Notes under the pieces: generated by a model | The model's input: the letters and a program-made list of their open reading frames with translations, nothing else | What the model was told of the DNA's origin: nothing | Databases searched by the model: none | Virus record (IMG/VR): IMGVR_UViG_3300042922_000643 | Coordinates: 124,001 to 188,000 of that record | Length of the DNA: 64,000 nt | Strand: one strand, 5' to 3' | Shown here: positions 18,336-63,799 of the stretch, one piece after another | Layout of the letters: each line of letters opens with the position of its first letter | Numbering within the stretch: position 1 is the first letter of the stretch | Program-made: the position numbers and the translations under genes

Positions 18336-18349
18336 CCGCTCTACTCCTC

Positions 18350-21300: not shown

Positions 21301-24300
21301 CATTTGCACCCAGATTAGAGTTCATAATCAACTGACCTTTAGAAAGCTTAACATCTCCCTCACTAAGACCGAAATGTTGTGTCATAAACCCACGGATTGC
21401 ACCCATCGCATTATCCATAGCTTCGACTCTTTTAACGTCTCCAACAGTAAATTGTTTATCGATTTGCTTTTGCGCTTCATCAATAACGAGTCGAACTTTT
21501 GAGTTCACAAATGATCCGTACTGTTCCTTCGAGAACTTCGCTTTTGGAAGAACGACATCCGCTTCAATGCCTAGCGCGTTAAGGATTTCATCAGAAGCAA
21601 CACGAGCCGTAACACGGTGACCAGCCTCAGAGATGATCTTTACACCATCAGACATGGATTGAAGCTCTTCGAAGATTAAGGAGTTGTTTGTAGTATCCAG
21701 ACCTTTAAAGATTGCTTTTTCACTACGTCCATTATAACGATATGATTCTCTAACCTTATCATCCTTCATTAAAGCTCCAACAGTGATATGCCCCTTTGTT
21801 GGGCTTCCGATACGATTGTCACGATCTAACAGAGACATGATATCGCGCTCAGATTCAGTTAGAGTTTCTTTAACACGGATAATACCATCTTCGCCTATCT
21901 CAGTACCGAGCATGTCCATCAATCTACGATCAATATTTGCACCTTCAGCCATACGTATACGGCTTTCGCGAGAAGTAACAAGCCCTTTGGCATAGCTTTC
22001 ACGAACAAGAACCATACCATCATAAGTTGTCATCATCGGATTGGACTTGCCCATCGTTTTTTCCATCATACCTTTAAGCTGGGAATCGTCGATATAGGCT
22101 GTCCGAGTACTCAGATATGCAAGTTCTTGGTCGTATATATTCTTACCAACATCTGTTACTAGTCCAGGAGTCAGATATCTACTGATCTGGTCAGCACTCT
22201 TTCCTCCACGACTTAGACCATCAACTACACGATTCCGATCAAGTGGAAGATAGTTGACAGACTTTTGGATATTTTCCTGCGTCATGGAGTTCCAGAAACC
22301 AAAAGGTGTGTCTTGTCTAGCATCGACACCAACCGCAGAAAGAATATTGTTGGCGGCTAAGGTATCCTTAACGTTCTGGAAATTGATATGGAGATTCAGT
22401 TTGCTTGCATAGGTAGGCGCTTCTTGATCGAACTTTCGACGTTCCTTCATGTTTAAAGAGTCGAGGAATGATCCTTTGAATTTGCTGGAGGCTTCATACT
22501 CTTTCTTTTTAAGAGCTTCACTACCATATTGATCTGCATACCAGCTTTTAGCAAGACCTGCTACATCAATCTGACCTGTGCGCAATCGTTTTGCACGGAG
22601 TGATTTACGAGCCTCTTCCTTCGTTAAACCATCTTCACTCATATATTTATTGTTCATAGAGAGAGATCCTATAGTTTGACGAACAATATTATTTCCCCAA
22701 GATTCACTTTCAGGTGCGCGACCTTGAAGTACAAGGTCTTTAATTTTCTTCGAGGAGCGAATCAGTTGCTGGCTCACAACATCGACACCAGAACCTAGCA
22801 TAAGCTTGCCGCGGTTGCGTCCCGTGCTCATCTCCATGGTCATAAGACGAGCAGATCTTTCCTGCCCAGGAACGAATACGTTGTTTTTCTCATTCAGAAG
22901 GGGCACCTTGATTGCGGCGACTTTACTGTGTTCAATAATCTCGTTTCCTTTAAGGCTGAAGATCTCTGCGGCTTGCTTTTTATTAGTCAGCGCCATTACT
23001 AGACCTTTATGCTTTTCATCATAAACAAATCCAACGGCAACGTCGTCAGAGGAGAATGCTCTTGCAAGATCCGTAAGTGTTTCAGAGATGCCTTGGCTTA
23101 CCAATGAAGAGTTTTTAGCTCCCGTGGATTCGAGTATATTATTGAATACCTTGTCATGAGTCTGGATCATCTGGTTAAAGATACTGTCTGTAGGATTGAT
23201 CAGGCCCTGACCTTGCCAGGAATTCGAGCGGAATGGAACGGCAGGAAGGATTGCGCGTTGATGAATCGATGCACGCTTACCGCCGTACCCACTACGAATT
23301 TTTTGAGCACGCAAAGGGTTCACATTAAAAGGATCTTCAACGGTCATAGTACTCATACCCATACCGTTGAGTCCTTTAGCTTGTTCATAGGTATGTTCTT
23401 GATGAATACGACCTGCAATTTCAGTGTAAAGTGTACCTAAAGAGTCATGGTCATCTAGGCGATCAATCAATCGGTACATTTCTTTAGCCGCTGAACCTGT
23501 AAGTCCTGAGCGACCTTTCGTACGTAGCTCATCGATCATTGTTTTGAGACGCTTTTTCGTAATACGCATCGATGGCTTGCCCATATCATAGCCGCTACCT
23601 ACAACACGTTTGATCCCCGACTCAACACTAGCAGGATCTTTTAATGAAATGTTATGTATTTCCCCATCCATCTTAATAGGGATTACTTTTTGGCTATCTG
23701 GAAGCTGAACTTCCATTGTGTTTCCACCAAATTCAGCGTCAATGATCTTACGATAGTTTTTCAGAGCTACGCCTTGGGCATATTTAGCACTAGAGCTGTC
23801 ACCTTGAAGCGGAGATTTCTCCAATTCAGAGATAAAGTCAAGGATATGATCCTTTTCCCCTGCTACACGCTTCTTCAAAAGCTGGTAGTCTCGAACAAAT
23901 TCAGGTTTTGCTTCTTGGAAGACGCCCTTATTGTCCATGTATCCAAGTGCTTTTCGGACTTCCTCTGGGGATTTGCCAGCTGCTTCAGCTTCAACCCCGC
24001 CAATCATTCGTTTAATCTGTGTAACGCCGCCTTCAGGACTGAATAAACGGTCCCAACGACGACGAGCGCGGTCAGCCATAGTGTTTCCTTGCAGTGTTTT
24101 ACGCTCAATTTCAGATAGATGATCCATAGGAATGAAATGCTGCCCAAAAACAGAACGCAATTCATCTTCGCTTTCTCTAAAAATCATGTGATAAAGGTCT
24201 TCGCCATCAGGAGTTTGGTTGCGAAGTACAGCTCCAAAGTGGCTTTTCCCATCAATCTGGAAATCTTTAACTGTTTTTTCTAATGTATAAGCTGTATTTT

Positions 24301-25618
24301 TATAAATTGGGTTCGGTTTAATATTTTCATACACAGGAACAAGCTGACCTTTTTCGTCTCGCTTATAAACCATATCAAATTTACCATTACGTGATGCTTC
24401 AAACGAAGACATGCCACTAACCGAGAATAAGGAGTCGCCCATTTTAAAAGGAGTTCTATCCCACGAAGCACTGAGAGGACCTTTCACTCCAATACCATTC
24501 GGACCAATCAGATTCTGAGAAGAAACCAGCTTGTTAAAAATGTCCGCGGAAGTGTTCAAGTCATCAATCGCTGTATGCGCAACACCCTTAGAGATACCAA
24601 GCATGTCTGCAACCTGCTCTTGTTTCAGGTTCTTACCAAATATACTAGCTTGATTGCGGAAAAACGTTCTAAAGATCTGAAGATTATCCACTACTCGACC
24701 TGAACCGAAGCTGTTTACTAACGCTGTTAGCTCTTTCTGTTGCTTAGGACTAGTAACTAGCGGGTTTAGATGGTTCATTAAATAGTCTTTCATCATTGGA
24801 ATATCGTAAGCATCAATGTTTGCGCCACCAATAATCGCATTCTTTCGCCCACCAATAACTCGTGCAAGCTCACTTACAACTTGTTCTGGTGAACTGCCGT
24901 AAGATAAGTTAGTACGACCTTTATGCATCCGCTTTACTTGGTCAGGAGTAAAGATAAATCCTGTAGGAGCCTGCTTGTCTCGAAGCTGTCTATTAAGATA
25001 GGTAGCGCCGTTTTTACCTTTACTGAAATAACCATTGCCAAATGGATCATCATCCCCATAGAGGATAAGGTCATTCAACGTACGGCGTTCATCTTTTGAC
25101 AATGAGCTTGTGGCATAACCATTACTCGCTACTTTCTGAAGCAGAGAATCAATATGAGCAAAGACATTGTCTGTAGGCCGAACAAGAAGAGATACCTCTT
25201 TGGACTTTGGCATTCTTTCAAAGGTATAATTGCTGGAAACTTTCCGCTGTCCAATCGCTATTTCTGTTGGGGAATACCAAGGGAGGCTATCGCTACCTTT
25301 GCCTCCGAAAGTACCCAGGTTTTCTATGTCCATCATAAATACATTGTCTCCAGGTCTTACGGATAACAAATTTTCGATGGTCTTTTGCGGACTCGAACCA
25401 AACCAATTGCCAGGGCTTACGCTACGGTAGATACCAAGCTCTTCAGCGGGAGCCCCAAGCATACCTTGTGCATTTCGGGCATAAATCTCCCCAAGCGGTT
25501 CGCTTCTTTTAAAAGATCCGCTTCGAATGCTAGACCAGACCAGGCGAGAATTCTCGCCCGATCCTATGTATGTATAATTCAGTTTAGCTTTCTTCGCTGC
25601 GTCTTCGTAACTAGCCAT
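18350..25618 (-). CDS. Single-chain double-psi-beta-barrel (multisubunit-type) RNA polymerase with N-terminal DEDDh exonuclease; putative virion RNAP
   Basis: NADYDGD at 19874-19894; FVNRYPTIHES at about 19988-20020; SKGSIAKKLLTSQQDMSGRF at about 20280-20340; beta-like TYDGMVLVRE and GVKIISEAGHRVT; DEDDh motifs MMDIENLG / GANIDAYD / AHTAIDD. Confidence 0.88.
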   Translation of the reverse strand: MASYEDAAKKAKLNYTYIGSGENSRLVWSSIRSGSFKRSEPLGEIYARNAQGMLGAPAEELGIYRSVSPGNWFGSSPQKTIENLLSVRPGDNVFMMDIENLGTFGGKGSDSLPWYSPTEIAIGQRKVSSNYTFERMPKSKEVSLLVRPTDNVFAHIDSLLQKVASNGYATSSLSKDERRTLNDLILYGDDDPFGNGYFSKGKNGATYLNRQLRDKQAPTGFIFTPDQVKRMHKGRTNLSYGSSPEQVVSELARVIGGRKNAIIGGANIDAYDIPMMKDYLMNHLNPLVTSPKQQKELTALVNSFGSGRVVDNLQIFRTFFRNQASIFGKNLKQEQVADMLGISKGVAHTAIDDLNTSADIFNKLVSSQNLIGPNGIGVKGPLSASWDRTPFKMGDSLFSVSGMSSFEASRNGKFDMVYKRDEKGQLVPVYENIKPNPIYKNTAYTLEKTVKDFQIDGKSHFGAVLRNQTPDGEDLYHMIFRESEDELRSVFGQHFIPMDHLSEIERKTLQGNTMADRARRRWDRLFSPEGGVTQIKRMIGGVEAEAAGKSPEEVRKALGYMDNKGVFQEAKPEFVRDYQLLKKRVAGEKDHILDFISELEKSPLQGDSSSAKYAQGVALKNYRKIIDAEFGGNTMEVQLPDSQKVIPIKMDGEIHNISLKDPASVESGIKRVVGSGYDMGKPSMRITKKRLKTMIDELRTKGRSGLTGSAAKEMYRLIDRLDDHDSLGTLYTEIAGRIHQEHTYEQAKGLNGMGMSTMTVEDPFNVNPLRAQKIRSGYGGKRASIHQRAILPAVPFRSNSWQGQGLINPTDSIFNQMIQTHDKVFNNILESTGAKNSSLVSQGISETLTDLARAFSSDDVAVGFVYDEKHKGLVMALTNKKQAAEIFSLKGNEIIEHSKVAAIKVPLLNEKNNVFVPGQERSARLMTMEMSTGRNRGKLMLGSGVDVVSQQLIRSSKKIKDLVLQGRAPESESWGNNIVRQTIGSLSMNNKYMSEDGLTKEEARKSLRAKRLRTGQIDVAGLAKSWYADQYGSEALKKKEYEASSKFKGSFLDSLNMKERRKFDQEAPTYASKLNLHINFQNVKDTLAANNILSAVGVDARQDTPFGFWNSMTQENIQKSVNYLPLDRNRVVDGLSRGGKSADQISRYLTPGLVTDVGKNIYDQELAYLSTRTAYIDDSQLKGMMEKTMGKSNPMMTTYDGMVLVRESYAKGLVTSRESRIRMAEGANIDRRLMDMLGTEIGEDGIIRVKETLTESERDIMSLLDRDNRIGSPTKGHITVGALMKDDKVRESYRYNGRSEKAIFKGLDTTNNSLIFEELQSMSDGVKIISEAGHRVTARVASDEILNALGIEADVVLPKAKFSKEQYGSFVNSKVRLVIDEAQKQIDKQFTVGDVKRVEAMDNAMGAIRGFMTQHFGLSEGDVKLSKGQLIMNSNLGANAQGSFNLQSVQNFLSEFDKEENKWIGAGGFLKNTIEYGQESFGNADVYNWENSMGATFEGRFDPRTGRMKKVESIDGLVSWGIKETGAISDRADRFLGEGNAVSSWVNKHVSAAARAQNRDIDGYARNLISASLDLTDTDLQQKGILREGEVVIRTRGDSFHINDRDGIRAGRINNGITEISAHTFTDPPQSGYKGQTRTVGDYSNTVIQMGGEHVELFENGKATGKKMSDAIRQNGGTALFELPGDNFGRKYVRFFDSHIASVPINADESMAVLTDLQKAQIKIASKSKEYQAAQTPETETALRNAISNYDEQVRYEITSSKGSIAKKLLTSQQDMSGRFRAQTVNPLASGNFKEGSLYVSEQRMLEMIDGAEDKVLRATNAERHNVLSTEWKEANKNLKTSDRIPKNMFMREAALAEIKEKGLYGFVNRYPTIHESTNAVLKVEVSNELTKANARTGLFTVGTATSLNADYDGDFISNVLAHYKYQEGAEVHQAMAKIHQGSLPEFEAVAKEVRSDIESKASAQGVTVQELWRSAEFRKEFHEQWAPKVGPLQDAETAIARLGKADVGVLDNTRYKLSSLIYGVKETLKSGGMLTEERSAELSTMRSHLDDFGRAVSQKAISSKKFKIEDFVQSYIANNEGATLEAAQEYARTNLIQRDAALEDLKGGINRPDGDGIERIRKANSVLGIFDTASGAGFTPTDAQPFEFEHMLDSLQKTGQYTGRSRGLFNDVSDKLFVSEGIKSPEDLSNMLRGKGTSILETPGMQHLINFDPRIAESLEKPLSYSSKALASNLEEPNMGSLLRESQATPLSEELLGGATTAKNSGEKVRELADRFAAGFGGGGSAGFGTIRAAGLVFGGLWAASAITRGGPTPEETVRGKDGVIEESMPRGSAMGMLDKSPTARVTPNEDGEHINISINSKQASTMSEQQIAALVHGELNAMMPMQLNMNMNVQDNTTNLDQQWLQGIVSQAISGGRIIS

Positions 25619-25632
25619 CGCTACATTCCCCT

Positions 25633-28600
25633 TTATCCAAATATTGAACCCATGTTATTGTTAAACTCCGAGACGATTTCATCTCTACGGTCTTTGATAA
25701 AGTCCATTGCAAGACTTATCTTATTCTCACCCTGTAAAGGTGAAGTCGTCATACTCACCTGCGCATCCTTAAGCCCTGCGCCTTGAAGAATCTTTTCGAT
25801 TCTAGTGATATCAATCGACATGCTAGGGCGGAATGGTTCAATTCGATTAACCCCAGAAGAGTCTGCATTCTTTACATCATCCTGCCACATTCCAAACTCT
25901 GTCAGTTCTAGACCTTCGTTTCGAACGACTTTAAGTTTGATATCGTCAAGATTGACATTGGCATCCCAGCCCTCCCACTTTGCATTAGGGAGATAGTGAT
26001 CCTTAAAGTACGAGTTTAAGCTCTCAGGCTCGTCTGTGTCCATACCCCATTTTGCTTGGTAGAACCGACGCTGATTCTTAGGAACCAACCGAAGAATTTC
26101 TTCTCTTTCTTTCGGAGCCGCAGTCATAAATTGAGTAAAGAATTCACGGTCCTTACTAGGAAGAGCTCGGAAGATCTTTGTCATGTCTCCATTCGGATCT
26201 GCCCCGTATAGTGTGGACTCATACTGCTCTTTATATTGCAGAGCTTGCATCGTCTTCGAACCGATACGGTAAGAACCGCGGTCTTGATCGATCATCTTGA
26301 GTCGGCTACGAACATTATCTAACTGTTCCTCGACTACGTCCTCGTCAACATAACCTATCTTCTTCGCCATGGAAAGCCATTTTTTCGAAGCATCCAGATA
26401 ATTACGAAGTTTTTTATTCTTTTGACCGCGGTCACCGCTGTCTCCGACAAGTTGATCGACGTCGATCCCCTCTTCGTCCTTAGCTCGCTCAGCAGCTCTC
26501 TCGTAGAGACCTTTATACTTCATGTATTTCAGAACATCGAAATACTCATTAATAGCACGTTCTTTTTCTCTTCGCTTAGGAATCCAGGCGTAGTCATCTC
26601 CACCAGGAGAACGACGACCTACAAATTCGTCGATGCTACGTGCAGCCGCGAGTCCACCAAAGACAGCAGCTCCAACCCACTTACCATAATACTTACCTGC
26701 GCCCTTCTTACCAAAGAGCCATCCAATACCATAGCCTTGTGCTGCACCAACCAGAGGATTCTGAGAGGCTGCGGTTTCCAACATCGGCTGAATCCATCCA
26801 CCCCAAGGATCTGTCCAAGGTCTCCAAGCTTTACCATAGACTTCATTCTTCTTGTACATTTCAAGTGGTGAACGAACCTGCATAAACTTGTCTGCAATTA
26901 CCCCAACGATTGGGATCTTCGGAATAGCATCATGAGTCATCCATTCCATCATGCGGCCTACGGTGACCTGCGTCTTGTCATACATAGCGATAGTGCCTAC
27001 ACCCGTATTTTCACCTGAAGCATTTACGCCGTCTTTCTTATCAAACTTACGAGCCAGCATTGCATTAACGGATTGCCCTTTGGTACTCATATAGAAAGGA
27101 TTGTGGTCATTGCCGTTACTATATACAACAGCGTGCATCGTGTTCATCGTATCGTCACGGACTCTATTGATTGGGTCAGCGTCTACACCAATCGTAATTT
27201 TAGCGCCCTCGTAGATATACTGCTGGAGCCATTCTTTCGCCTTCTCTGCATCCGCTTTTACCTTAACACCTGCAAGACGAATTGGATTGTTTGGATGTTC
27301 CGCAGTTAAGAAAGTATTCGCATCAAGAACCTTAGTAACAGTCACTTTCTGGTTATCGACTTCTGCATTGCGGAATTTGTTTGGATAGAAGTGGTATTTA
27401 TCTTTCTTAGCAGCCACTTGATCACGGACTTCTGCGTATTCATCTTCCATGCCCGTAGTCAGTGCGCCTGCTTCTTTCATCTGAGAAACCATTCGACGCC
27501 AGTATTTATATTCATCAGAGTAAGGTGCAACGTCAGCCAGGATCTTGAATCGATCAAATGCACCATAGTCTCCAAAGGTGTCAGGATGGAGCTTGTTAAG
27601 GCTCTCATACGCAGCGCCAGGAAGTCTCATTTCACCCTTAGCAACTTTAGTATATGGGTCTCCATGTTGGAAATCGATGAAGTAGTTAACGCCTGGCAAC
27701 CAATCAGGCATCTTATTTTGCAGAGGATTGTAATACTGTTTACGTGGATCTTTTGCTAGATAACGACGAGCAATTTCTGAGAACTCGCCGCCGAAGAATC
27801 CATCGGCACCGCCCATTTCCATATCCCAGAAGGAACGGCCATAACTCATCATACGGCTGGAGCGGTCTAACTTCTGACTCCGAATATTCGTATCTATTCC
27901 CATTGCCATATTTGCAGAGAAACCATAGATACCCGCTTGTTCTGTAAGGCCGTACCACATGTCTCCAAGGACCTGTGAGCCGCTGTACGGGCTTCCAATG
28001 TCCTTAAGGTCTGCTACAAAGTCTGGGTCACGAAGCGACTCCAGGCTGCTCATAGGGCGTGCTGGGAGCAACATACCGCCACCAGGTCCTACACCAGCAC
28101 CAGCGCCTGTTCCTCCAGCACCAGCAGCAACTATACCTGCGTTGATAGATCCGAGATTGTCCATAGCCAAAGCACCTGTAGTATAAGCGCCTGAGCTACT
28201 AGGACCACTTTTCCCATACCGAGTTAGCTGCGGAAGAGAAGGAGCATCTAATGAAGAAAGACCTTCACCAAAACCACCTCCGAAGGAGGAAGACTCAGAT
28301 AGCAGGTTGTATCCACCCGCAGGCATGAACTGAATAACGCCTTCACCTGTCGCGCTATCATACTGAGAAGTAATGTAATCATTAACTTCTTTCTGGTACT
28401 CACGGTGAGCCTTCGACAGGTCTTTGTTTTCACGATATGGATTGAGTAGACCACCAACTGTTCGATTTAGAGCAGGCCCAATAAGCGGGATCATTCCCAG
28501 CTCTTGAATGCCTCCACTAATTGGATAAGGGCGATCTTCAGCATGCTTTTTCTCATAGTGATCTGGATCAGTCAAGAAGTGCTTAATTGGAGCAAACGGA

Positions 28601-31600
28601 TGAGTAAGAGTAGGCATCCAACTATTAGCCCAGTACTCACTCTCACTACCGTACATTGTGTCTGTGAACTTATAATCAGACTTCATGCGGCGATACCAGT
28701 TAGGCTGGAAGCGGTCTATCTTTCCGCCTTCCCAAGGGGTTGTTGAGCCTATTCCCCACCAGCGGCCTTTGCGGACAGCGTCTTCTCCGCTTTCATAGTA
28801 ATGACGAAGTTCATCCTCACTACGAGTGTCCCCAAAGAATCCAAATGATCCATACTTAACAGCAGCACCAATAGGTGTTTTCCATAGCTGATCTAAGCCA
28901 GGTATCAATTCTGCGAACTCTTTACCGATCTGATTAATGCCAGTAAACTGTTTAAACCATGCAGTATCCAAAGACATGTTCGCATATGTATCCGCGGCTT
29001 TGTCACTGACTCTATCACCAGTCATACCGTCCAGGTGTTGCAACTGCTGAAGAGCAACATATGGAAGAACAATTCGCCGTCCAAACTGGTTGGTTATGAT
29101 ACTCTGCATCGATCCTCTATTTTTTTGAGAGAGACCAAGACCGATCTTCGCCAGGGAGTTGTCCAGACGTTCTGCAAAGTAGTACGGAATCATAGATGCC
29201 ATAGTAAAGTCTTGAATATTTTTGCGGCCTGCAAATGGTTGACCTAGAACCTTCATAGCAGAACTTGTTGATGCTTTTAGAGGACTTACTCCGTCTGTAA
29301 TTTGACGATTAATGTCTTCAAGCATCCAGTTCTTACCTCGGCCTTTATTCATGACGAGGTTACCGACTAAACCAAAAGGCTGTGGAGGTTGATCGCCAGG
29401 GCCCATGGACCATATTGGTGTGTAGTTTGTTACGGTATTAGAAAGAACTTCTCTGAAATCATCACGACGTATTAGATCGCCCTTAAAAGCTTCTAATGCT
29501 TCAGTCTTAGCTTGCGGACCTAAACGATAAACATCGTCCCAGTAGCGGTGTAACTCGTTAAGGACAGACAAATCCCCAACTTCTCTTGCTGCTTTCTCAG
29601 GAAGATTACCGTTCTTGATTCCTTCGCGAACGAGATCTGCTACAGAAACCTGAGCAGTTTGCTCGATCTGTTCAATAGCGTGCTGATGGATTAAGCGTTT
29701 AACATCGTCAATTCTATTTACTATATTAGTTTCGTGTACGTCTAAAGGCTGTAGAGGTCCCATGAGGTAAGGAGCATTGTCAGAGACAATACGCTTACCC
29801 TTTAGAAATTCCCCTTGGTTGTTGTGGTACTTCTCCCAAGTCTCGCTGACCTGACTGCCTACTTTACGCATGGCAATCCGACCATTCTTTTCACTCATAC
29901 CCGCACGAATACGGCCTAGAGACCCCATAATATCATCAGGCCCAAATAAGTTTCCTAGATCGATATTCGACTCTCCGTACGCTTGCTTCGCATAACTATT
30001 TAAGAAGTTTGCAGTATCATCGGACAAGGGCTTTGCTCTGGAGTTAATTTCTGCGTAGATATCCTTGTAAGAAGATTCTAAATCTTTGATCGTTGCATCA
30101 TCTTTAAAAATTGTTTTGTAGCGGTTACGCATCCAGTTTGGATCATCAAACTTGGTGAATGTGCTTAATGCTCGACTAAGAATAGTTTCAGACTCTTGTC
30201 CGCCGATATCAAATAATCGTTTAATGAATCCGCGATTAGCTCCAGCGCCCGTATGTAAGTTTGCAATGGAAGACATTGCTCTTGGAATAGCACCGAATCT
30301 AGCAGAGGCCAGCGTTACATTATCCTTAACAATTTCACCACTAACCAAATCCATAACTTTATTATTAGAGTACAGATAGTCTCGGCTCAGTACACCTACG
30401 GCAGCGTCTTGATTATGAGCCCGTGGATGTCTTAAGGTTTCGGCCACCCCATGTAAAGAAGGCTGGATAGTTCCTCGTTGCATCAAGTATGTTTTTGGAG
30501 CTTCTTTCATTGCTTCGTATGTGGTCCAGTGTGCAAGATCCAATGGGTTAAATCTCAGGAAAGGGACTTGGAAGTTTTGTTGAACGAACGAAGCAGACTT
30601 ATATAGACCTTCATGGAGACTTCTAGTATCTACGATATGTCCCGCATCATTAATGAATATACGGTGGTCTGCAACAAGATCAAGGAATCTGCTGTCTTTA
30701 TTGGCCATTGCAGCGATTTTATTACCTATACGGCCATTGACAGCCTCACCATTAATACGGCGGCGAATGACAGAGTCATTATCAAAGAGCTTATTGACCC
30801 ATTTTCCTGATTCATTCTTCTCTAGTAAATCTTTATTTACAACGGGACGGTATCCTGCACCACCCATCATTTTCGTAAGGAATGTTTCTTTCTTTTGATG
30901 GCGAGAAACAAAGTCATCAATGAGCTTGTTTTTCAGATTAACACTGCCCTGTACAGGAACACCATCAATAGATCCAGGCCGTTTTGCACCTCGAAGAACA
31001 CGACGGTCTAGTCGTCTAGCATCTGCTCTTTTTTGGAGAGTAGTGAACATTCCCTCAACAAATTCTTTACGAGCTGTCTCATCAGGAAGTTCTATCGAGA
31101 ATGCATTGTTATTCTTAACTTTATTTTCAGGACTGTATCTCTTCAACATATTCTCAATTCGTTCTACTCCAGGGTTCAGGAAGAAGTCCGAATCTTGAGC
31201 GTGAAGGTCATTAAGAATTTCACCAAGTCCTCTTTCAAAATGCTGAGGGAATTTGGTCTTGAGATCATTCATTGCCAACGTCTTTTGAGTAGAACGAATA
31301 TAACTTCGGCCTGTCGAAGAGAGATCAGTAATCAGCTGGCTATAATCTGTTTCAATATTAGTAGGCATACCGCCTAGTATACTTTGTTGTCTACGTATAG
31401 CTGTTTCGGTACTTCGAGATAAAGAGGATTCTAATCGCTGATTAAACCTCTCTGGGTTTAAAAAATGAGATACAGGGGAGCGTCGGTCTAAAGCATGATC
31501 AAGTGCTTTGATACCTGACATTGCATCCCCGATGAGGCCACCTATCTTAGGGGCCTGGTGAAGGTATGAAGCCGTTCTAAGAGCTGCACCCCCAACGATA

Positions 31601-31758
31601 CGGCCTGCGTCTCCAAGCGTCTCAGACGCCATCCTACGAGTTGCTGGGGACAGTGCGAGGGTGGCAGCAGCGCCAAGTGCAGCAATACCCCAGACCCCGT
31701 GATGAGTCTCTTGTTCTTTCTCACTATTCAGGTATCTTGAGTATTGGTTATCCGCCAC
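25633..31758 (-). CDS. 2041-aa tape-measure-like protein with a degenerate SNase-fold domain
   Basis: First gene after the tail chaperones; helical with Gly-rich hydrophobic segments at both ends; VTKVLDANTF...IRLAGVK...VNAMLARK at about 27040-27350. Confidence 0.6.
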   Translation of the reverse strand: MADNQYSRYLNSEKEQETHHGVWGIAALGAAATLALSPATRRMASETLGDAGRIVGGAALRTASYLHQAPKIGGLIGDAMSGIKALDHALDRRSPVSHFLNPERFNQRLESSLSRSTETAIRRQQSILGGMPTNIETDYSQLITDLSSTGRSYIRSTQKTLAMNDLKTKFPQHFERGLGEILNDLHAQDSDFFLNPGVERIENMLKRYSPENKVKNNNAFSIELPDETARKEFVEGMFTTLQKRADARRLDRRVLRGAKRPGSIDGVPVQGSVNLKNKLIDDFVSRHQKKETFLTKMMGGAGYRPVVNKDLLEKNESGKWVNKLFDNDSVIRRRINGEAVNGRIGNKIAAMANKDSRFLDLVADHRIFINDAGHIVDTRSLHEGLYKSASFVQQNFQVPFLRFNPLDLAHWTTYEAMKEAPKTYLMQRGTIQPSLHGVAETLRHPRAHNQDAAVGVLSRDYLYSNNKVMDLVSGEIVKDNVTLASARFGAIPRAMSSIANLHTGAGANRGFIKRLFDIGGQESETILSRALSTFTKFDDPNWMRNRYKTIFKDDATIKDLESSYKDIYAEINSRAKPLSDDTANFLNSYAKQAYGESNIDLGNLFGPDDIMGSLGRIRAGMSEKNGRIAMRKVGSQVSETWEKYHNNQGEFLKGKRIVSDNAPYLMGPLQPLDVHETNIVNRIDDVKRLIHQHAIEQIEQTAQVSVADLVREGIKNGNLPEKAAREVGDLSVLNELHRYWDDVYRLGPQAKTEALEAFKGDLIRRDDFREVLSNTVTNYTPIWSMGPGDQPPQPFGLVGNLVMNKGRGKNWMLEDINRQITDGVSPLKASTSSAMKVLGQPFAGRKNIQDFTMASMIPYYFAERLDNSLAKIGLGLSQKNRGSMQSIITNQFGRRIVLPYVALQQLQHLDGMTGDRVSDKAADTYANMSLDTAWFKQFTGINQIGKEFAELIPGLDQLWKTPIGAAVKYGSFGFFGDTRSEDELRHYYESGEDAVRKGRWWGIGSTTPWEGGKIDRFQPNWYRRMKSDYKFTDTMYGSESEYWANSWMPTLTHPFAPIKHFLTDPDHYEKKHAEDRPYPISGGIQELGMIPLIGPALNRTVGGLLNPYRENKDLSKAHREYQKEVNDYITSQYDSATGEGVIQFMPAGGYNLLSESSSFGGGFGEGLSSLDAPSLPQLTRYGKSGPSSSGAYTTGALAMDNLGSINAGIVAAGAGGTGAGAGVGPGGGMLLPARPMSSLESLRDPDFVADLKDIGSPYSGSQVLGDMWYGLTEQAGIYGFSANMAMGIDTNIRSQKLDRSSRMMSYGRSFWDMEMGGADGFFGGEFSEIARRYLAKDPRKQYYNPLQNKMPDWLPGVNYFIDFQHGDPYTKVAKGEMRLPGAAYESLNKLHPDTFGDYGAFDRFKILADVAPYSDEYKYWRRMVSQMKEAGALTTGMEDEYAEVRDQVAAKKDKYHFYPNKFRNAEVDNQKVTVTKVLDANTFLTAEHPNNPIRLAGVKVKADAEKAKEWLQQYIYEGAKITIGVDADPINRVRDDTMNTMHAVVYSNGNDHNPFYMSTKGQSVNAMLARKFDKKDGVNASGENTGVGTIAMYDKTQVTVGRMMEWMTHDAIPKIPIVGVIADKFMQVRSPLEMYKKNEVYGKAWRPWTDPWGGWIQPMLETAASQNPLVGAAQGYGIGWLFGKKGAGKYYGKWVGAAVFGGLAAARSIDEFVGRRSPGGDDYAWIPKRREKERAINEYFDVLKYMKYKGLYERAAERAKDEEGIDVDQLVGDSGDRGQKNKKLRNYLDASKKWLSMAKKIGYVDEDVVEEQLDNVRSRLKMIDQDRGSYRIGSKTMQALQYKEQYESTLYGADPNGDMTKIFRALPSKDREFFTQFMTAAPKEREEILRLVPKNQRRFYQAKWGMDTDEPESLNSYFKDHYLPNAKWEGWDANVNLDDIKLKVVRNEGLELTEFGMWQDDVKNADSSGVNRIEPFRPSMSIDITRIEKILQGAGLKDAQVSMTTSPLQGENKISLAMDFIKDRRDEIVSEFNNNMGSIFG

Positions 31759-41205: not shown

Positions 41206-42309
41206 TTAAATTTGATCCTTTTTAGACATCTTAGTAGCGTCAGTGAAGTCACTAGGCAGCGGCATGAGGTCGAATGCACGTTCTGGAGCTGGCCAGGTCT
41301 TTGCATACTTGATGTTACGGGCAACAGCGATACCAAGACCACCATAGAGAATACCTACGCCGTAACGCTCTTTAACCTTCAGCGTCTGGATATCACGAAG
41401 CGGATCATCAAACTGCTCAGTGGAGATTTCGTCTTTTACCACGATAACCCCAATGTTATTACGGTCAATGACATAGAAGTCGAACTTCTTGTCAGCTTGA
41501 TGGAAGCCGATGAATGGCGAGAAGATGATATTCAGGCCAAGAGAGTTGTTGGCATTGTACTCACGAGGATCTTTGAAGTACTGACCTTGGCCGAAAGCAG
41601 CGATGTCGTTCTGACCGAGCATAGCGTTTTTAGCGAACAATGCCCAGCACAGAGGGTGCATGATGATATCGGTAGGTGTAAAACCTGCGGACATGATGGA
41701 AACCGCCATGTCAACCATATCTTCAGCAGTCATAGTACCGTTGAATTCACCAGAGAAGCCGCGGCCTGTCGGATAACCGTCATCACCAGGAGCATATTTA
41801 TCAGCATCGAATACTACGTGACCATGTTTGTTGAACTCTTCGAAGATAATTTCTTCTTTCAAACGAGCCATTGCACGGCCAGCAGCACGCAAGTGAAGTC
41901 CAATTACGTCCCATTGGGAGTCAGCGATCATTTCGTCAGTAATAGGCACTTTCAAACCGTATTTCTTGACTTTAACATCTACCGACTGTGCAATACCTTG
42001 TCCTGTCAGGTTCAACAGCTGATCTCTGTATTCTTGACCTTCGCCAACTTCGAACGCCCGTACAGCACCAAAGTGCATAAACTCAATGGAGCGTCCTTCA
42101 TTCAGCTGGACCTGCTGGAAGAACTGGGAAGCCAAGTACAACGGCTCAGCAGCTTCAACAACAACCTGCGAAATGACTTTCGGGATGAGCAAGTTAGCAT
42201 CGGCAGTAGTCAGTGCCTCTGTAACTGTTACACGAGATTCACGATCTCTCCGACCTTCGAAGCTCATCATTTTTGTATATTTTTCTTGCAGTTCAAGAGC
42301 AGTCGTCAT
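41206..42309 (-). CDS. Major capsid protein (HK97-type)
   Basis: EALTTADANLLIPKVI, VGEGQEY, KYGLKVPITDEMIADSQWD, QTLKVKERYG; strong codon bias. Confidence 0.85.
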   Translation of the reverse strand: MTTALELQEKYTKMMSFEGRRDRESRVTVTEALTTADANLLIPKVISQVVVEAAEPLYLASQFFQQVQLNEGRSIEFMHFGAVRAFEVGEGQEYRDQLLNLTGQGIAQSVDVKVKKYGLKVPITDEMIADSQWDVIGLHLRAAGRAMARLKEEIIFEEFNKHGHVVFDADKYAPGDDGYPTGRGFSGEFNGTMTAEDMVDMAVSIMSAGFTPTDIIMHPLCWALFAKNAMLGQNDIAAFGQGQYFKDPREYNANNSLGLNIIFSPFIGFHQADKKFDFYVIDRNNIGVIVVKDEISTEQFDDPLRDIQTLKVKERYGVGILYGGLGIAVARNIKYAKTWPAPERAFDLMPLPSDFTDATKMSKKDQI

Positions 42310-42376
42310 TAGTATGAGTCCTCCTTCATATTTATATGGTGGGGAGGTCTCCCTCCCTCACCATGAGGTTTGTTAA

Positions 42377-43681
42377 TTAGCGTTGCAGCAAGATGCGCAC
42401 GGCACCTACGGAACCAGCATAATCCCACTCTGTAGGAATGCCTGCGACAGGATCTACAACCAGCTTGGCATCAACAGTAACTGCATTCACAGTCACGCCT
42501 GCTTCCAAGTAGAGAACTACCAGGTTGTTCGTGTAGTCAATATGTACGTCGCTAGCGGATACGGCAACGCCGTCTGCTTTTACAACAACAGGATTATCTT
42601 CAACACGGTCGATTGGATGACGAAGCTTGATGAACAAAGCGTTGTTGCGAGTATCGGCGGAAACTTTCGCGCCCTTATCTACAACATTGTTAGCCGATGG
42701 AGTGAATGTACCCGTTACATCATGACCGAAAGTAATGCCACCGCTAAAGATAACGGACTCAACATGACCATCGTTGTTCGTAGATGCATTGTAGATATCA
42801 TCCATAGCAATACCAGTTACGACTTGTTTAGCCTTGAAGTAACCGTCTGTCAGGAATGGAATACCGCGGTTGATTACTGGGTTCAGCAATTTCTCGAAGT
42901 CAGTTTTCCAGCCGTGCAGTTTCCAAGGGTAACCGAATGGATATGCTCCAGCATCACCAGTACCACCAGCAGGAGCAAGTGGATCATTAGGATACGAAGG
43001 GGCCGATGTGCCATTCTTACCTGGGGATGGAGCGTAAGAGCTGTCTTTGATGAAGGCTTCAAGTTCATCAATTTTCAGATCCATGAAGTAGGCCAGCAAA
43101 CCAGCAGGTGGCAATTCTTTTTCTACGGCCCATACTTGACCGATGATCTGGAATGCGTTGTCAGCAGTTGTGTCCAGCTTCGTAAAGTTACCATTTGCGC
43201 CTACTTTAACGTAGTCACCTGGTTTCAATGCCCCAGCAGTACCATAAGCTGCACCGAATTTCATTGCATCTGCAAAGCCTTGAGCAGTAGACAAGGTTGC
43301 GTGTTCGAACAATGGAACTTCGATATAGTTACGGGTAATAACTGTAGCTGCGTTACCAGAGAAACGGTCACGTTTGCGTTCGTACAAGTTGTGATGGTTG
43401 ACACCAACAGCAGCCTTGGAGTCAGCAGCAGCTTGTTTTACAGTCAATACTTTGTAGCCAGTTTCGTAATCGAATTCAGGTTCGCCAAGTTCTACGACTT
43501 TACCTTTTGCGATAACAACGTTCTGATTACCTTCTGGTCCGTAAGCATAGTTGAATTTAACGCCTTCAGACTTTGCTGGAATCATTTTCTCCGAAGGGGC
43601 GACACCCTCGGATACGACGAGACCCGTATGAGTCTTGCCTTTGAAATACATATCGCCTGTTGTACCAGGGAATAATGGCAT
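42377..43681 (-). CDS. Head decoration/cement protein
   Basis: Between protease and MCP; strong codon bias; ALKPGDYVKVGANGNF..IIGQV beta-tulip-like pattern. Confidence 0.6.
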   Translation of the reverse strand: MPLFPGTTGDMYFKGKTHTGLVVSEGVAPSEKMIPAKSEGVKFNYAYGPEGNQNVVIAKGKVVELGEPEFDYETGYKVLTVKQAAADSKAAVGVNHHNLYERKRDRFSGNAATVITRNYIEVPLFEHATLSTAQGFADAMKFGAAYGTAGALKPGDYVKVGANGNFTKLDTTADNAFQIIGQVWAVEKELPPAGLLAYFMDLKIDELEAFIKDSSYAPSPGKNGTSAPSYPNDPLAPAGGTGDAGAYPFGYPWKLHGWKTDFEKLLNPVINRGIPFLTDGYFKAKQVVTGIAMDDIYNASTNNDGHVESVIFSGGITFGHDVTGTFTPSANNVVDKGAKVSADTRNNALFIKLRHPIDRVEDNPVVVKADGVAVSASDVHIDYTNNLVVLYLEAGVTVNAVTVDAKLVVDPVAGIPTEWDYAGSVGAVRILLQR

Positions 43682-56177: not shown

Positions 56178-56207
56178 TTGACATACATGCACTTTATATT
56201 ATATTAT
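56178..56207 (+). promoter_or_regulatory. sigmaA-type promoter for the RHH gene
   Basis: TTGACA-18nt-TATTAT. Confidence 0.6.
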
Positions 56208-56297
56208 GGTTATGTGAAGAACGTACAAAGGAGGCGTGTGTCATGATCACGTCGAGAGTTAAAACTACATTAATACTACAAGGAGGTAAGGTCAGTT

Positions 56298-56489
56298 ATG
56301 GGCAAGAAGAGTTTGAAAACAAGATCGCAGTTCACCAGCACCTTACGAAATGATCTTTATGCAGAGCTTCAACAAGCATCACAAAACAGTGATATACCGA
56401 TCTCTAGGATTTTAGATCGCGCATTAGAAAAACATTTGGAGGAATTTGACTCCACTTCTAAAAGTTTAGACAGGTATAAAAAGGAATAA
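56298..56489 (+). CDS. Ribbon-helix-helix DNA-binding protein
   Basis: FTSTLRNDLYAELQQAS...IPISRILDRALEKHL. Confidence 0.8.
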   Translation: MGKKSLKTRSQFTSTLRNDLYAELQQASQNSDIPISRILDRALEKHLEEFDSTSKSLDRYKKE

Positions 56490-56742
56490 GGTAGTCCATA
56501 CTATTAGAGTCCAGAAGACTCCCTTTAACAGCCCTTGGGACTCAGACCCCAGGGGCCTCCTTATGGGACTAAGGTCTATACGAACAGCTAAGGTAAATGT
56601 TGTAATCTATTGAAAAGTGCTCACAAACGAGTAAAAATGTTTTATACTATAGAAACTAAGATGTTTCATCTCGAAAGAATGCGGTTATAACACTCATACA
56701 GCAAGATGATACGTACTTAGAAGACTTTTGGGAGGATTGAGG

Positions 56743-57393
56743 ATGGGAACAATGACTAGAGAGATCAAAAACCTACGTGGTAAACGTGCCGCTAAGAGAA
56801 TCCAGGAGGCGCAAGACGCTGTTAGAGAGTCTGAGCAGAATGCAGTTCGCTACCAAGAAACTGAAAACACAACGGCAGGATATCTACAGCAGCTATACTT
56901 CGGTATCGATCAGCTAATCCAGATCGCAATCCGACAGGACGAGGAAATTAAGAACCTAGTGGAGCAAGTCGCCATGATCACAGACAAAGGCCGAGCGCCA
57001 GTGCCTGTAGCCGCAACGATCTTGGAACCAGTCACATATACAAAGCCAGAGCTTACTACTTACGAACCTAGTCCAGTAACGGCTGTACGGAAAAAGGGCG
57101 CACAGAAGAATGTACTTACACTGGCTAAAGCTTTTAGCTTAATTGAGAAGTACCGTTCTAGCCAGGGCAGAATCTTGTGGTCTCAAGCTCCAAAACCAAA
57201 GAAGCTCGTTTTCGCTTATCTACAAAAGGCAGAGCTCGAAAAGCTGGATATTGAAAGCACGATGGTTATGCAGAGTATTCCTGAGTATCGCCGAGTATTC
57301 CAGTATGTTGTTTATCACATCGGACCTTGGAGAGAGATCGTAGAGGAATATAAGAGTGAGCGTGGGGATTTGAAAAAACAGGAGGCCGTATAA
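56743..57393 (+). CDS. Hypothetical protein: coiled coil plus C-terminal helical domain
   Basis: ATG after GGAGG; heptad N-terminal half. Confidence 0.6.
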   Translation: MGTMTREIKNLRGKRAAKRIQEAQDAVRESEQNAVRYQETENTTAGYLQQLYFGIDQLIQIAIRQDEEIKNLVEQVAMITDKGRAPVPVAATILEPVTYTKPELTTYEPSPVTAVRKKGAQKNVLTLAKAFSLIEKYRSSQGRILWSQAPKPKKLVFAYLQKAELEKLDIESTMVMQSIPEYRRVFQYVVYHIGPWREIVEEYKSERGDLKKQEAV

Positions 57394-57432
57394 ACTATAT
57401 GGCGGATGATGAATCGGAGATTCAACAAGAAT

Positions 57433-57477
57433 AAATAGGAGAGTCCTCTTCATAACAGAGGGGCTCTCCTATTTTGT
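57433..57477. terminator. Bidirectional terminator between convergent genes
   Basis: AAATAGGAGAGTCCTCT-loop-AGAGGGGCTCTCCTATTT with A/T flanks. Confidence 0.75.
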
Positions 57478-57657
57478 TTATCTGCGGTTAAGGGATTCTT
57501 CAGCGATCTGGATCAATCTCTTCGTAATGTTGCCACCAATAATCCCAGCTTCTCTAGACGTCAGGTTACCATTGTAGTCACTCAGTTGAATACCAAACTC
57601 TTGTGCAATTTCAAACTTCATCCGATCTAGTGCCTGTCTCGCTTGTGGAACTTGCAT
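57478..57657 (-). CDS. alpha/beta-type small acid-soluble spore protein (59 aa; below ORF-track cutoff)
   Basis: MQVPQARQALDRMKFEIAQEFGIQLSDYNGNLTSREAGIIGGNITKRLIQIAEESLNRR; GGAGGTGA RBS. Confidence 0.92.
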   Translation of the reverse strand: MQVPQARQALDRMKFEIAQEFGIQLSDYNGNLTSREAGIIGGNITKRLIQIAEESLNRR

Positions 57658-57686
57658 ATGTATTCACCTCCCTAAGTTTATAGGGA

Positions 57687-57715
57687 TAGCATTTCCATCC
57701 ATGGCGATTTTATAC
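57687..57715 (-). promoter_or_regulatory. Candidate forespore (sigmaG/sigmaF-type) promoter for the SASP gene
   Basis: GTATA-17nt-AATGCTA, just downstream of a terminator. Confidence 0.45.
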
Positions 57716-57748
57716 AAAATAAAAACTGCCCTCACTTGGAGAGCAGCT
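57716..57748 (-). terminator. Intrinsic terminator isolating the SASP gene
   Basis: CTGCTCTC-CAAGT-GAGGGCAG followed by TTTTTATTTT. Confidence 0.75.
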
Positions 57749-57753
57749 ACACA

Positions 57754-57954
57754 TTAGCCCCAGTAGTATCCATCGCTTTGAACCTTAGCCCATTGCTCTG
57801 TATCCCATATCTGCGTAGACTGTTGTTTATTACCATAGCAATTAGCGATAAGAACGACCTTTAGGAAATCACGACCAGGAAAAGAAGGTGTCCAGTCAGA
57901 TACATAAGGTTCAACAGAGATGATCTCTTCGATATAGTTCTCCAATAAGTTCAT
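57754..57954 (-). CDS. Hypothetical phage protein (66 aa)
   Basis: ORF with GGGGGG RBS, in operon orientation. Confidence 0.55.
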   Translation of the reverse strand: MNLLENYIEEIISVEPYVSDWTPSFPGRDFLKVVLIANCYGNKQQSTQIWDTEQWAKVQSDGYYWG

Positions 57955-63535: not shown

Positions 63536-63799
63536 ATGGACAAAATTATTCGCGTTACTGCAAAATCAAACACAAATTCGGTTGCTGGGTATCTCGCAAT
63601 GGCTCTGCGTGAACATGGACGGGTTGAGATTCACGCTATTGGCGGGGGTGCTGTAAATCAAGGGGTCAAGGCTATTGCAATCGCTCGCGGATATGTTGCT
63701 CCAAGCGGTGTTGATTTGATTTGCATTCCTGCCTTTGATCACACAGAGATCAACGGTGAAAGTAAAGTCCAGATCAAGTTCATCGTTGAACCTCGCTAA
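63536..63799 (+). CDS. spoVS: Stage V sporulation protein S
   Basis: NSVAG...AIGGGAVNQGVKAIAIARGYVAPSGVDLICIPAF...IKFIVEPR closely follows B. subtilis SpoVS. Confidence 0.95.
   Translation: MDKIIRVTAKSNTNSVAGYLAMALREHGRVEIHAIGGGAVNQGVKAIAIARGYVAPSGVDLICIPAFDHTEINGESKVQIKFIVEPR

What the first reader, a model, noticed from the sequence alone, without database searches (positions are those of the whole stretch)
57478..57748. Unannotated alpha/beta SASP gene as a stand-alone forespore-expressed unit
Seen: a 59-aa SASP with the FEIAQEF germination-protease site and LTSREAG..GG.ITKRL motif. It is flanked by terminators and has a GTATA-17-AATGCTA promoter candidate. Known: alpha/beta SASPs coat spore DNA, protect it from UV and heat, and are sigmaG-transcribed. 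Inference: the phage supplies its own DNA armour when trapped in spores.
Basis: partly seen in the sequence, partly recalled or inferred. Interest (0 to 1): 0.6.

Follow-up and report, generated by a model that had tools for sequence, protein, structure and literature searches.

The report
Jumbo phage carries spore DNA-coat gene
A 251-kb soil phage carries a working copy of a bacterial spore DNA-coating protein gene behind a promoter that looks like its host's developing-spore promoters. This is a good example of something already known from other Bacillus phages, not a new kind of system.

Summary
Window 57478..57657 (-) encodes a 59-aa alpha/beta-type SASP (Pfam PF00269, E 7e-25). It aligns over both helices of SspC in structure 2Z3X and keeps the EIAQEF and GGNITKRL motifs. 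The gene is its own unit: upstream terminator, GTATA-N17-AATGCTA promoter, strong ribosome-binding site, and a bidirectional downstream terminator.

A scoring matrix built only from Paenibacillus chromosomal ssp promoters ranks this promoter 3rd of 503,020 positions in the phage genome. Two related phage contigs keep the unit. Their dN/dS is about 0.05, the -10 box is unchanged, and both terminator stems carry compensatory changes.

The genome is a 251.5-kb, non-integrating jumbo phage related to Bacillus phages Edson, WH1 and KLEB27-3, which lack a SASP. The gene nests among Paenibacillus SASPs, so it was captured from a Paenibacillaceae host.

Forespore expression and protection of trapped phage DNA are well motivated but untested. 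No RNA data exist.

Phage SASPs are already known (SPbeta/phi3T sspC, SPO1 gp34.25, CampHawk, phage G), and the "armour" idea was published in 2013. The new details are:
- a hybrid sigmaF/sigmaG-like -10 region (GG upstream);
- loss of the N-terminal arm;
- a spoVS homologue 6 kb away.

Verdict: a new member of a known kind, of moderate interest.

The parts
57478..57657 (-). [quoted passage not shown]
   Evidence: PF00269, E 7.2e-25; SspC 2Z3X, E 8.7e-12; dN/dS 0.045-0.052 against L084 and L086
57665..57672 (-). Ribosome-binding site GGGAGGTG, 7 nt before the ATG
   Evidence: Conserved in L084 and L086
57687..57696 (-). -10 region GGAAATGCTA: the AATGCTA heptamer plus an upstream GG
   Evidence: Identical in L084 and L086. 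GGAAACGATT sits at the same place in the distant relative L092
57711..57715 (-). -35 element GTATA (GCATA in L086)
   Evidence: The same pentamer is found in Paenibacillus ssp promoters and in phi3T sspC
57714..57748 (-). Intrinsic terminator of the preceding gene (stem-loop 57748..57724 plus T-run). It insulates the SASP unit from upstream transcription
   Evidence: -13.9 kcal/mol, z -3.2. Compensatory G>A / C>T change in L086
57433..57474 (.). Bidirectional terminator hairpin shared with the convergent gene 56728..57393
   Evidence: -22.2 kcal/mol on the minus strand, -24.3 on the plus strand. Compensatory change in L086
57754..57954 (-). Upstream neighbour, 66 aa, phrog_3458 (unknown function). 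A separate transcription unit
   Evidence: The same order is seen in L084
56728..57393 (+). Convergent downstream neighbour, 221 aa (likely start ATG 56743), no family match
63536..63799 (+). SpoVS homologue, 87 aa: a second sporulation-type gene of the same phage, also kept in the relative L092
   Evidence: (PF04232, E 1.4e-30)

Best explanation
This is a functional alpha/beta-type SASP gene that an ancestor of this jumbo phage captured from a Paenibacillaceae host. The phage keeps it as an insulated single-gene unit.

The proposed mechanism has five steps:
1. The phage's own transcription programme does not drive the gene. It is read by host RNA polymerase carrying a forespore sigma factor (sigmaG, possibly already sigmaF).
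2. The gene is therefore switched on only when the phage genome sits inside a developing spore.
3. The protein joins the host SASP pool there and coats double-stranded DNA without sequence preference, the 251-kb phage genome included. This protects the DNA from UV, heat and desiccation while the spore is dormant.
4. At germination the host protease GPR, which the phage does not encode, cuts it at E|IAQEF.
5. The DNA is released and the phage can resume development.

Shown here: the protein's identity and intact motifs, the unit's architecture, purifying selection, the promoter's resemblance to host ssp promoters, and host origin.

Inferred: which sigma factor acts, expression in the forespore, DNA binding, GPR cleavage, entrapment of the phage genome, and any fitness benefit.
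For: Identity:
- PF00269 at 87 bits.
- Alignment to both helices of SspC in the DNA complex 2Z3X.
- The EIA GPR motif (PMC8452069) and GGNITKRL are present.

Selection:
- dN/dS is 0.045 and 0.052 against two diverged phage copies.
- The gene sits at the same position in L092, a syntenic relative whose shared proteins are only 26-70% identical.

Architecture:
- Both terminators fold far better than shuffles.
- Both carry compensatory stem changes in L086.

Promoter:
- GTATA-N17-AATGCTA ends 29 nt before the ATG. Paenibacillus ssp genes carry GTATA/GAATA-N17/18-CATGATA/CAAAATA/AATAATA ending 25-33 nt before the ATG.
- The host-derived matrix ranks the site 3rd of 503,020.
- The -10 is invariant, and the -35 change in L086 (GTATA to GCATA) stays within the consensus.
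- The gap holds no sigma-70-like site.
- The motif is unique in the genome, so it is not a phage promoter class.

Precedent: sspC of phi3T/SPbeta carries GTATA-N17-CACAATA.

Origin:
- The gene nests in a well-supported clade of Paenibacillus SASPs, apart from the Bacillus-phage SASPs.
- The nearest cultured relatives lack it.

Context:
- There is no integrase or resolvase.
- The phage also carries spoVS.
- Candidate hosts encode GPR and the phage does not.
Against: - There is no expression evidence. Only soil DNA metagenomes hold the phage.
- The -10 departs from the classic sigmaG heptamer at its first base (A for C).
- The distant relative L092 does not match the sigmaG pattern cleanly.
- SASP genes of SPO1 and Thrax5 show no forespore-type promoter in my scan, so forespore control is not universal among phage SASPs.
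- Candidate hosts already carry about 7-8 full alpha/beta SASP genes each (9-11 family hits), so the marginal benefit of one more is unclear.
- Binding is non-specific, so any protection cannot be aimed at phage DNA.
- The host is inferred only from protein similarity.
Confidence: 0.6

Rival explanations
1. Early silencer rather than armour. The promoter is read by sigmaF straight after asymmetric division, before the host's own sigmaG-dependent SASPs appear. The phage SASP then coats DNA early and shuts down phage lytic genes in the forespore, so that the spore is completed with a quiescent phage genome inside.
For: - The -10 region reads GG-N2-A-N-G-C-T-A at 14 nt from GTATA. This is the spacing and GG signature of Paenibacillus sigmaF-type promoters: sigG GAATA-N14-GGGGATAATT and GGAGATAATG, and spoIIR GGACATACTG.
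- None of the 22 host ssp promoters has this GG.
- The GG is kept in L084, L086 and L092.
- In C. difficile a G upstream of the -10 distinguishes sigmaF from sigmaG promoters (PMC3789822).
- SASPs influence sporulation progress in C. difficile (PMC8452069).
Against: - The conserved A at position 7 of the sigmaF decamer is G here.
- Only ten host sigmaF-type promoters, of about four distinct types, were compared.
- Sequence alone cannot separate sigmaF from sigmaG.
- There is no evidence on timing or on silencing.
Confidence: 0.12
2. Host-benefit or sporulation-manipulation gene. The extra SASP, together with SpoVS, raises spore quality or pushes the infected cell through a sporulation checkpoint. 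The phage benefits only indirectly, through survival of the carrier spore.
For: - A spoVS homologue lies 6 kb away and co-occurs with the SASP in L092.
- Phages often carry sporulation genes (PMC10294663).
Against: - Hosts already encode many SASPs.
- The checkpoint role is known only in C. difficile.
- This reading largely overlaps the main explanation and differs only in who benefits.
Confidence: 0.15
3. Vegetative weapon or shield. The SASP is made during lytic infection to coat DNA, either shutting off the host chromosome or hiding phage DNA from nucleases.
For: From established knowledge (not tested here), alpha/beta SASPs bind any double-stranded DNA and block transcription and replication when expressed in growing cells. 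SPO1-type virulent phages carry SASP genes without a recognisable forespore promoter.
Against: - The unit is insulated by terminators on both sides.
- It has no sigma-70-like promoter.
- Its promoter motif is unique in the genome rather than shared with other phage genes, and it ranks 3rd genome-wide against host ssp promoters.
Confidence: 0.08
4. A neutral passenger: a recently captured host gene with no role for the phage.
For: The closest cultured relatives lack it, and it lies in a variable region between modules.
Against: - dN/dS is about 0.05.
- The promoter and terminators are conserved with compensatory changes.
- It is retained at the same position in a relative with only 26-70% protein identity.
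- The N-terminal arm is lost consistently in the phage lineage.
Confidence: 0.03

Closest known systems
SspC of Bacillus subtilis prophage SPbeta / phage phi3T
   Same: A phage-borne alpha/beta SASP, kept as a single gene set against the orientation of its neighbours. Its forespore-type promoter is GTATA-N17-CACAATA. The protein has the same fold as the 2Z3X structure.
   Different: - About 53% identity, in a separate clade.
- 70 aa with a full N-terminal arm, against 59 aa here.
- Carried by a ~130-kb temperate Spbetavirus, not a 251-kb phage without a recombinase.
- Classic C-first -10 without an upstream GG.
SASP of SPO1-like virulent myophages (SPO1 gp34.25, CampHawk, Goe2 and others)
   Same: A large virulent-type phage of a spore former carrying one SASP gene as a lone, oppositely oriented unit. 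The CampHawk authors already proposed that it protects phage DNA (PMC3868849).
   Different: About 51% identity, 80 aa with a long C-terminal tail. My scan found no forespore-type promoter upstream.
sspD-like SASP of the megaphage G (Lysinibacillus host)
   Same: A giant phage of a spore former carrying a SASP among other sporulation genes (PMC12484599).
   Different: Phage G also carries a spore protease, RsfA-like regulators and a sporulation sigma factor. This phage has no GPR and no RsfA, only one divergent sigma factor, and SpoVS.
Chromosomal alpha/beta SASPs of Paenibacillus (for example P. qinlingensis, P. oryzisoli, P. alkaliterrae)
   Same: The closest sequences, at 67-71% identity, in the same clade. 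They share the loop insertion (YNGN) and the same promoter geometry.
   Different: The host proteins are 69-75 aa with an N-terminal arm. Their promoters lack the GG before the -10, and most begin the -10 with C.

Membership tests
alpha/beta-type SASP (Pfam PF00269) | Matches the family profile above the curated cut-off over nearly its full length | tested here: met
   87.2 bits against a cut-off of 22; residues 3-56 match profile positions 5-59 of 59. The six-frame search of the genome gives the same result.
alpha/beta-type SASP (Pfam PF00269) | Small size (about 60-75 aa) with two conserved helical segments, as in the SspC-DNA complex | tested here: met
   59 aa. Aligns to 2Z3X chain residues 4-55 with a 3-residue loop insertion. 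It is the shortest of 84 compared sequences and lacks about 5-8 N-terminal residues.
alpha/beta-type SASP (Pfam PF00269) | Germination-protease (GPR) recognition sequence around E-I-A in helix 1 | tested here: met
   KFEIAQEF is present. The 'EIA' motif is cited as the GPR site in PMC8452069. Q replaces the S of B. subtilis SspA/SspC, as it does in the Paenibacillus homologues. Cleavage itself was not tested.
alpha/beta-type SASP (Pfam PF00269) | C-terminal DNA-contact motif G-G-x-[IM]-[TV]-K-[RK]-[LM] | tested here: met
   GGNITKRL aligns with GGEITKRL of SspC.
alpha/beta-type SASP (Pfam PF00269) | Forespore-specific transcription (sigmaG, in some cases sigmaF) | tested here: inconclusive
   The promoter sequence matches host ssp promoters and ranks 3rd of 503,020. 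The -10 mixes sigmaF and sigmaG features, and no RNA data exist.
alpha/beta-type SASP (Pfam PF00269) | Non-specific binding to double-stranded DNA, with protection from UV and heat | not testable with these tools
   Needs purified protein, or complementation of an sspA sspB mutant.
Phage-borne SASP units (SPbeta sspC type) | Encoded in a genuine phage genome, not in flanking host DNA | tested here: met
   Terminase, portal and major head protein lie in the window. The terminase is 59-64% identical to those of Bacillus jumbo phages. Both contig ends carry phage genes. The same synteny is seen in three other viral contigs.
Phage-borne SASP units (SPbeta sspC type) | Single-gene unit with its own promoter and terminator | tested here: met
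   The same lone-gene layout is seen in phi3T, SPO1 and Thrax5.

The most novel reading that the evidence does not exclude
The phage has retuned a captured ssp promoter into a sigmaF/sigmaG hybrid. It has GG at the sigmaF position with 14-nt spacing, a feature absent from all 22 host ssp promoters examined. It has also trimmed the protein to its DNA-binding core. As a result the phage SASP would be made earlier than any host SASP and would act as a dormancy switch: it would silence the phage genome in the forespore and, together with the phage SpoVS, commit the infected cell to finishing a phage-carrying spore.
Probability: 0.12. Interest if true: 0.6.

Novelty: new member of a known kind. Interest (0 to 1): 0.35.

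Why it matters
Spores are a refuge from phages, and phages that ride inside spores gain the spore's persistence. To my knowledge the role of phage-borne SASPs has been proposed but never tested.

This case gives a clean test object: a 59-aa minimal SASP with a compact, conserved forespore-type promoter, in a non-integrating jumbo phage of soil Paenibacillaceae.

It also shows that this gene class was captured independently in at least two phage lineages, Bacillus phages and this Paenibacillus-type lineage. That argues for a recurrent selective advantage.

It does not change current understanding. It is a well-documented further example.

Tried and rejected
- Nucleotide search of the region against 50,697 phage records: no match.
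- Rfam scan of the whole window, plus a permissive scan of 56200..57800: nothing credible.
- Search for a sporulation-type phage sigma factor that could drive the gene: the only sigma factor (G000:218283..218951) is a divergent sigma-70/ECF-like protein, far below every SigF/G/E/K cut-off. The SASP promoter motif is unique in the genome. I therefore rejected phage-sigma control.
- GPR, RsfA, tyrosine integrase and serine recombinase in the phage: all absent.
- Spo0A boxes: TGTCGAA occurs 43 times against 33 +/- 8 expected, which is not significant. TGNCGAA occurs 176 times against 113 +/- 12, but this may reflect codon usage. I left this as inconclusive.
- Other forespore-type promoter candidates in the genome (27573-, 60706-, 50206-, 31200+): weak or without a clear downstream gene. 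Not pursued.
- RNA evidence: only three soil DNA metagenome runs hold the phage, and all three are possible sources of the record. I did not use read laying because contigs cannot show expression.
- Literature search by consensus strings gave only noise. Two cited papers were not held.
- I did not run the large representative protein search, structure prediction or complex prediction. The family assignment is unambiguous, and SASPs fold only on DNA.

Full report
**What is there.** On the minus strand, window 57478..57657 is an ATG-to-TAA frame of 59 codons. It reads MQVPQARQALDRMKFEIAQEFGIQLSDYNGNLTSREAGIIGGNITKRLIQIAEESLNRR. It matches Pfam SASP (PF00269) at 87.2 bits against a cut-off of 22, E 7.2e-25, over 54 of its 59 residues. 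It aligns with E 8.7e-12 to SspC in the solved SASP-DNA complex 2Z3X. The alignment covers both helices and has a three-residue insertion in the connecting loop. The EIA-containing protease site (named as the GPR site in PMC8452069) and the GGxITKRL segment are intact. This is the only SASP in the record.

**The unit.** Sixty-six bases separate the gene from the preceding gene (57754..57954, minus strand).
- That gap begins with a terminator: stem-loop 57748..57724 plus a T-run. The scan called it, and it folds at -13.9 kcal/mol, z -3.2, with no shuffle folding as well.
- Next come GTATA (57715..57711), 17 bases, and AATGCTA (57693..57687).
- Next is the ribosome-binding site GGGAGGTG, 7 bases before the ATG.
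- After the stop codon lies a hairpin at 57474..57433. It folds at -22.2 kcal/mol (z -5.1) on the minus strand and equally well on the plus strand. It therefore also ends the convergent gene 56728..57393.
- No sigma-70-like promoter is called in the gap.

The "stand-alone unit flanked by terminators" is therefore real.

**Is the promoter more than chance?** I tested this in three ways.
- Pattern frequency. GTATA-N17-[AC]AHNHTA occurs three times in both strands of the 251.5-kb genome.
- Comparison with host genes. The closest chromosomal homologues are Paenibacillus SASPs at 67-71% identity. Their upstream regions carry GTATA or GAATA, 17 bases, then CATGATA or CAAAATA, ending 30-33 bases before the ATG. 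The phage motif ends 29 bases before its ATG.
  - I widened this to all SASP genes of five Paenibacillus genomes. Of 30 genes, 22 show the motif.
  - Three orthologues use AATAATA, so an A at the first -10 position is within the natural range.
- Scoring matrix. A position weight matrix built only from the 16 distinct host sites was scanned over both strands of the phage genome. It ranks the SASP upstream site 3rd of 503,020 positions. The chance that one of the top three sites falls in this 66-base gap in the right orientation is about 4 in 10,000.

The motif is also unique in the genome, so it is not one of the phage's own promoter classes.

**Conservation.** Two related viral contigs carry the same unit.
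- L084 (97% protein identity) has the same gene order: Bro-N anti-repressor, 66-aa gene, SASP, convergent 216-aa gene, RHH gene.
- L086 is 86% identical.
- dN/dS is 0.045 and 0.052.
- Across the three copies the -10 region GGAAATGCTA is invariant. The -35 changes only from GTATA to GCATA, which stays within the consensus. The spacer varies.
- Both terminator stems carry paired G>A / C>T changes that keep the helices intact.
- A much more distant relative, L092, keeps a 62-aa SASP (70% identity) at the same place next to the RHH gene, and also keeps a spoVS homologue. Its shared proteins are 26-70% identical and lie in the same order. Its upstream region reads GTATA-N15-GGAAACGATT. This shares the GGAAA-G-T skeleton but does not fit the sigmaG heptamer.

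**What carries it.** The window lies in a 251,543-bp viral record of 42% G+C.
- Terminase, portal and major head genes are in the window.
- The terminase is 59-64% identical to those of Bacillus jumbo phages Edson, vB_BceM_WH1 and vB_BauM_KLEB27-3, and 34% identical to that of 0305phi8-36.
- None of those four genomes has a SASP.
- The record has no tyrosine or serine recombinase.
- Its ends carry phage genes (DNA polymerase III alpha, ribonucleotide reductase), not host flanks.
- It occurs in soil metagenomes.
- In a tree of 90 SASPs, the three phage copies form a supported clade (97/97). That clade sits inside a supported clade (98/89) otherwise made of Paenibacillus chromosomal SASPs plus L092. 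It is well separated from the SASPs of phi3T, SPO1 and Thrax5.

The gene was therefore captured from a Paenibacillaceae host, independently of the Bacillus-phage SASPs, and after this lineage split from its Bacillus-infecting relatives. The host assignment rests on this similarity alone.

The sequence does not settle it.
- Host sigmaF-type promoters, taken from the same five Paenibacillus genomes, read GAATA-N14-GGGGATAATT and GGAGATAATG (sigG), and GGACATACTG (spoIIR).
- The phage has GTATA-N14-GGAAATGCTA. This has the same spacing and the same GG, but G instead of A at the seventh place.
- None of the 22 host ssp promoters has that GG.
- In C. difficile, a G upstream of the -10 is what separates sigmaF promoters from sigmaG promoters (PMC3789822).

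The promoter is therefore best called forespore-type, with mixed sigmaF and sigmaG features. Expression may start earlier than that of host SASPs. This is inference only.

**How it most likely works.** When the phage genome ends up in a forespore, host forespore RNA polymerase transcribes the gene. The protein adds to the host SASP pool and coats DNA non-specifically, the phage genome included. At germination the host GPR removes it. GPR is present in all five candidate host genomes and absent from the phage. From established knowledge of SASP stoichiometry (about one protein per 4 bp), a 251-kb genome would need tens of thousands of extra molecules. That gives a simple rationale for the phage to bring its own gene.

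The phage-lineage proteins are the shortest in the comparison, at 59-62 aa against a median of 68. They lack the N-terminal arm. I did not test what this loss means.

**Rival readings.**
- An early sigmaF-driven silencer.
- A spore-quality or checkpoint effect, acting together with SpoVS.
- A vegetative DNA coat.
- A neutral passenger.

The last two are disfavoured by the insulation of the unit, the promoter evidence and the purifying selection.

**What is known already.**
- 63 phage records hold a SASP. They include SPbeta/phi3T sspC, whose promoter here reads GTATA-N17-CACAATA, the SPO1 group and Thrax5.
- The CampHawk genome note of 2013 states that the phage SASP presumably protects phage DNA (PMC3868849).
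- The megaphage G carries an sspD-like gene (PMC12484599).
- A systematic list of 31 phage-carried sporulation genes contains neither ssp nor spoVS (PMC10294663).
- PHROGs leaves the family unnamed, so such genes are easily overlooked.
- SPO1 and Thrax5 show no forespore-type promoter in my scan, so this control is not universal.

**Verdict.** It is a new member of a known kind. The points worth following up are the hybrid promoter, the trimmed protein, the link with spoVS, and the independent capture in a Paenibacillus-type jumbo phage.

Noticed in passing
window 63536..63799 (+): An 87-aa homologue of stage V sporulation protein S (PF04232, E 1.4e-30). It also occurs near the SASP in the relative L092 and in 14 phage records, including the related jumbo phage KLEB27-3.
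   Followed up: partly
window 56474..56503 (+) and 56490..56742: A perfect sigmaG-consensus match, GTATA-N18-CATACTA, lies at the end of the RHH gene, 224 nt upstream of the 221-aa convergent gene. The 250-nt intergenic stretch is 98% identical in L084, more conserved than synonymous sites nearby. No Rfam match.
   Followed up: partly
G000:C1:218283..218951 (L087:1390-2058, +): The phage's only sigma factor: 222 aa, a weak Sigma70_r2/r4 match far below all sporulation-sigma cut-offs. It lies next to a membrane protein with a DnaJ domain.
   Followed up: partly
window 11106..31758 (-): Three consecutive giant frames of 2409, 2422 and 2041 aa in the structural module. Not examined.
   Followed up: no
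window 41206..42309 and 42377..43681: The major head gene and its neighbour each have an antisense open frame of almost the same length on the + strand (41212..42312, 42383..43675). This is probably a codon-bias shadow. Not examined.
   Followed up: no
G000:C1:250378..251543 (L145:5879-7042, +): The record's right end cuts a ribonucleotide reductase large-subunit gene after 388 codons, so the '100% complete' record is cut within a gene. DNA polymerase III alpha is split into an 879-aa frame and a 311-aa frame.
   Followed up: partly
L088, L089, L090 (Bacillus phages Edson, WH1, KLEB27-3): Their terminase genes are about 975-985 codons and match this phage's 601-aa terminase in two pieces. This suggests an insertion (intein or intron) that this phage lacks.
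   Followed up: no
L092 (Logan contig, 24,965 bp): A distant syntenic relative carrying SASP, RHH, SpoVS and a subtilisin-like peptidase. Its SASP upstream reads GTATA-N15-GGAAACGATT.
   Followed up: partly
Paenibacillus genomes G001-G005: Each has 9-11 hits to the SASP family, including two-domain or split forms of about 97-119 aa.
   Followed up: no
whole genome G000: The loose Spo0A-box pattern TGNCGAA occurs 176 times against 113 +/- 12 expected. The strict box TGTCGAA is not enriched.
   Followed up: partly
window 56178..56207 (+): A near-consensus sigma-70 promoter (TTGACA-16-TATATT, 11 of 12) lies upstream of the RHH gene. This contrasts with the SASP gap, which has no such promoter.
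   Followed up: no
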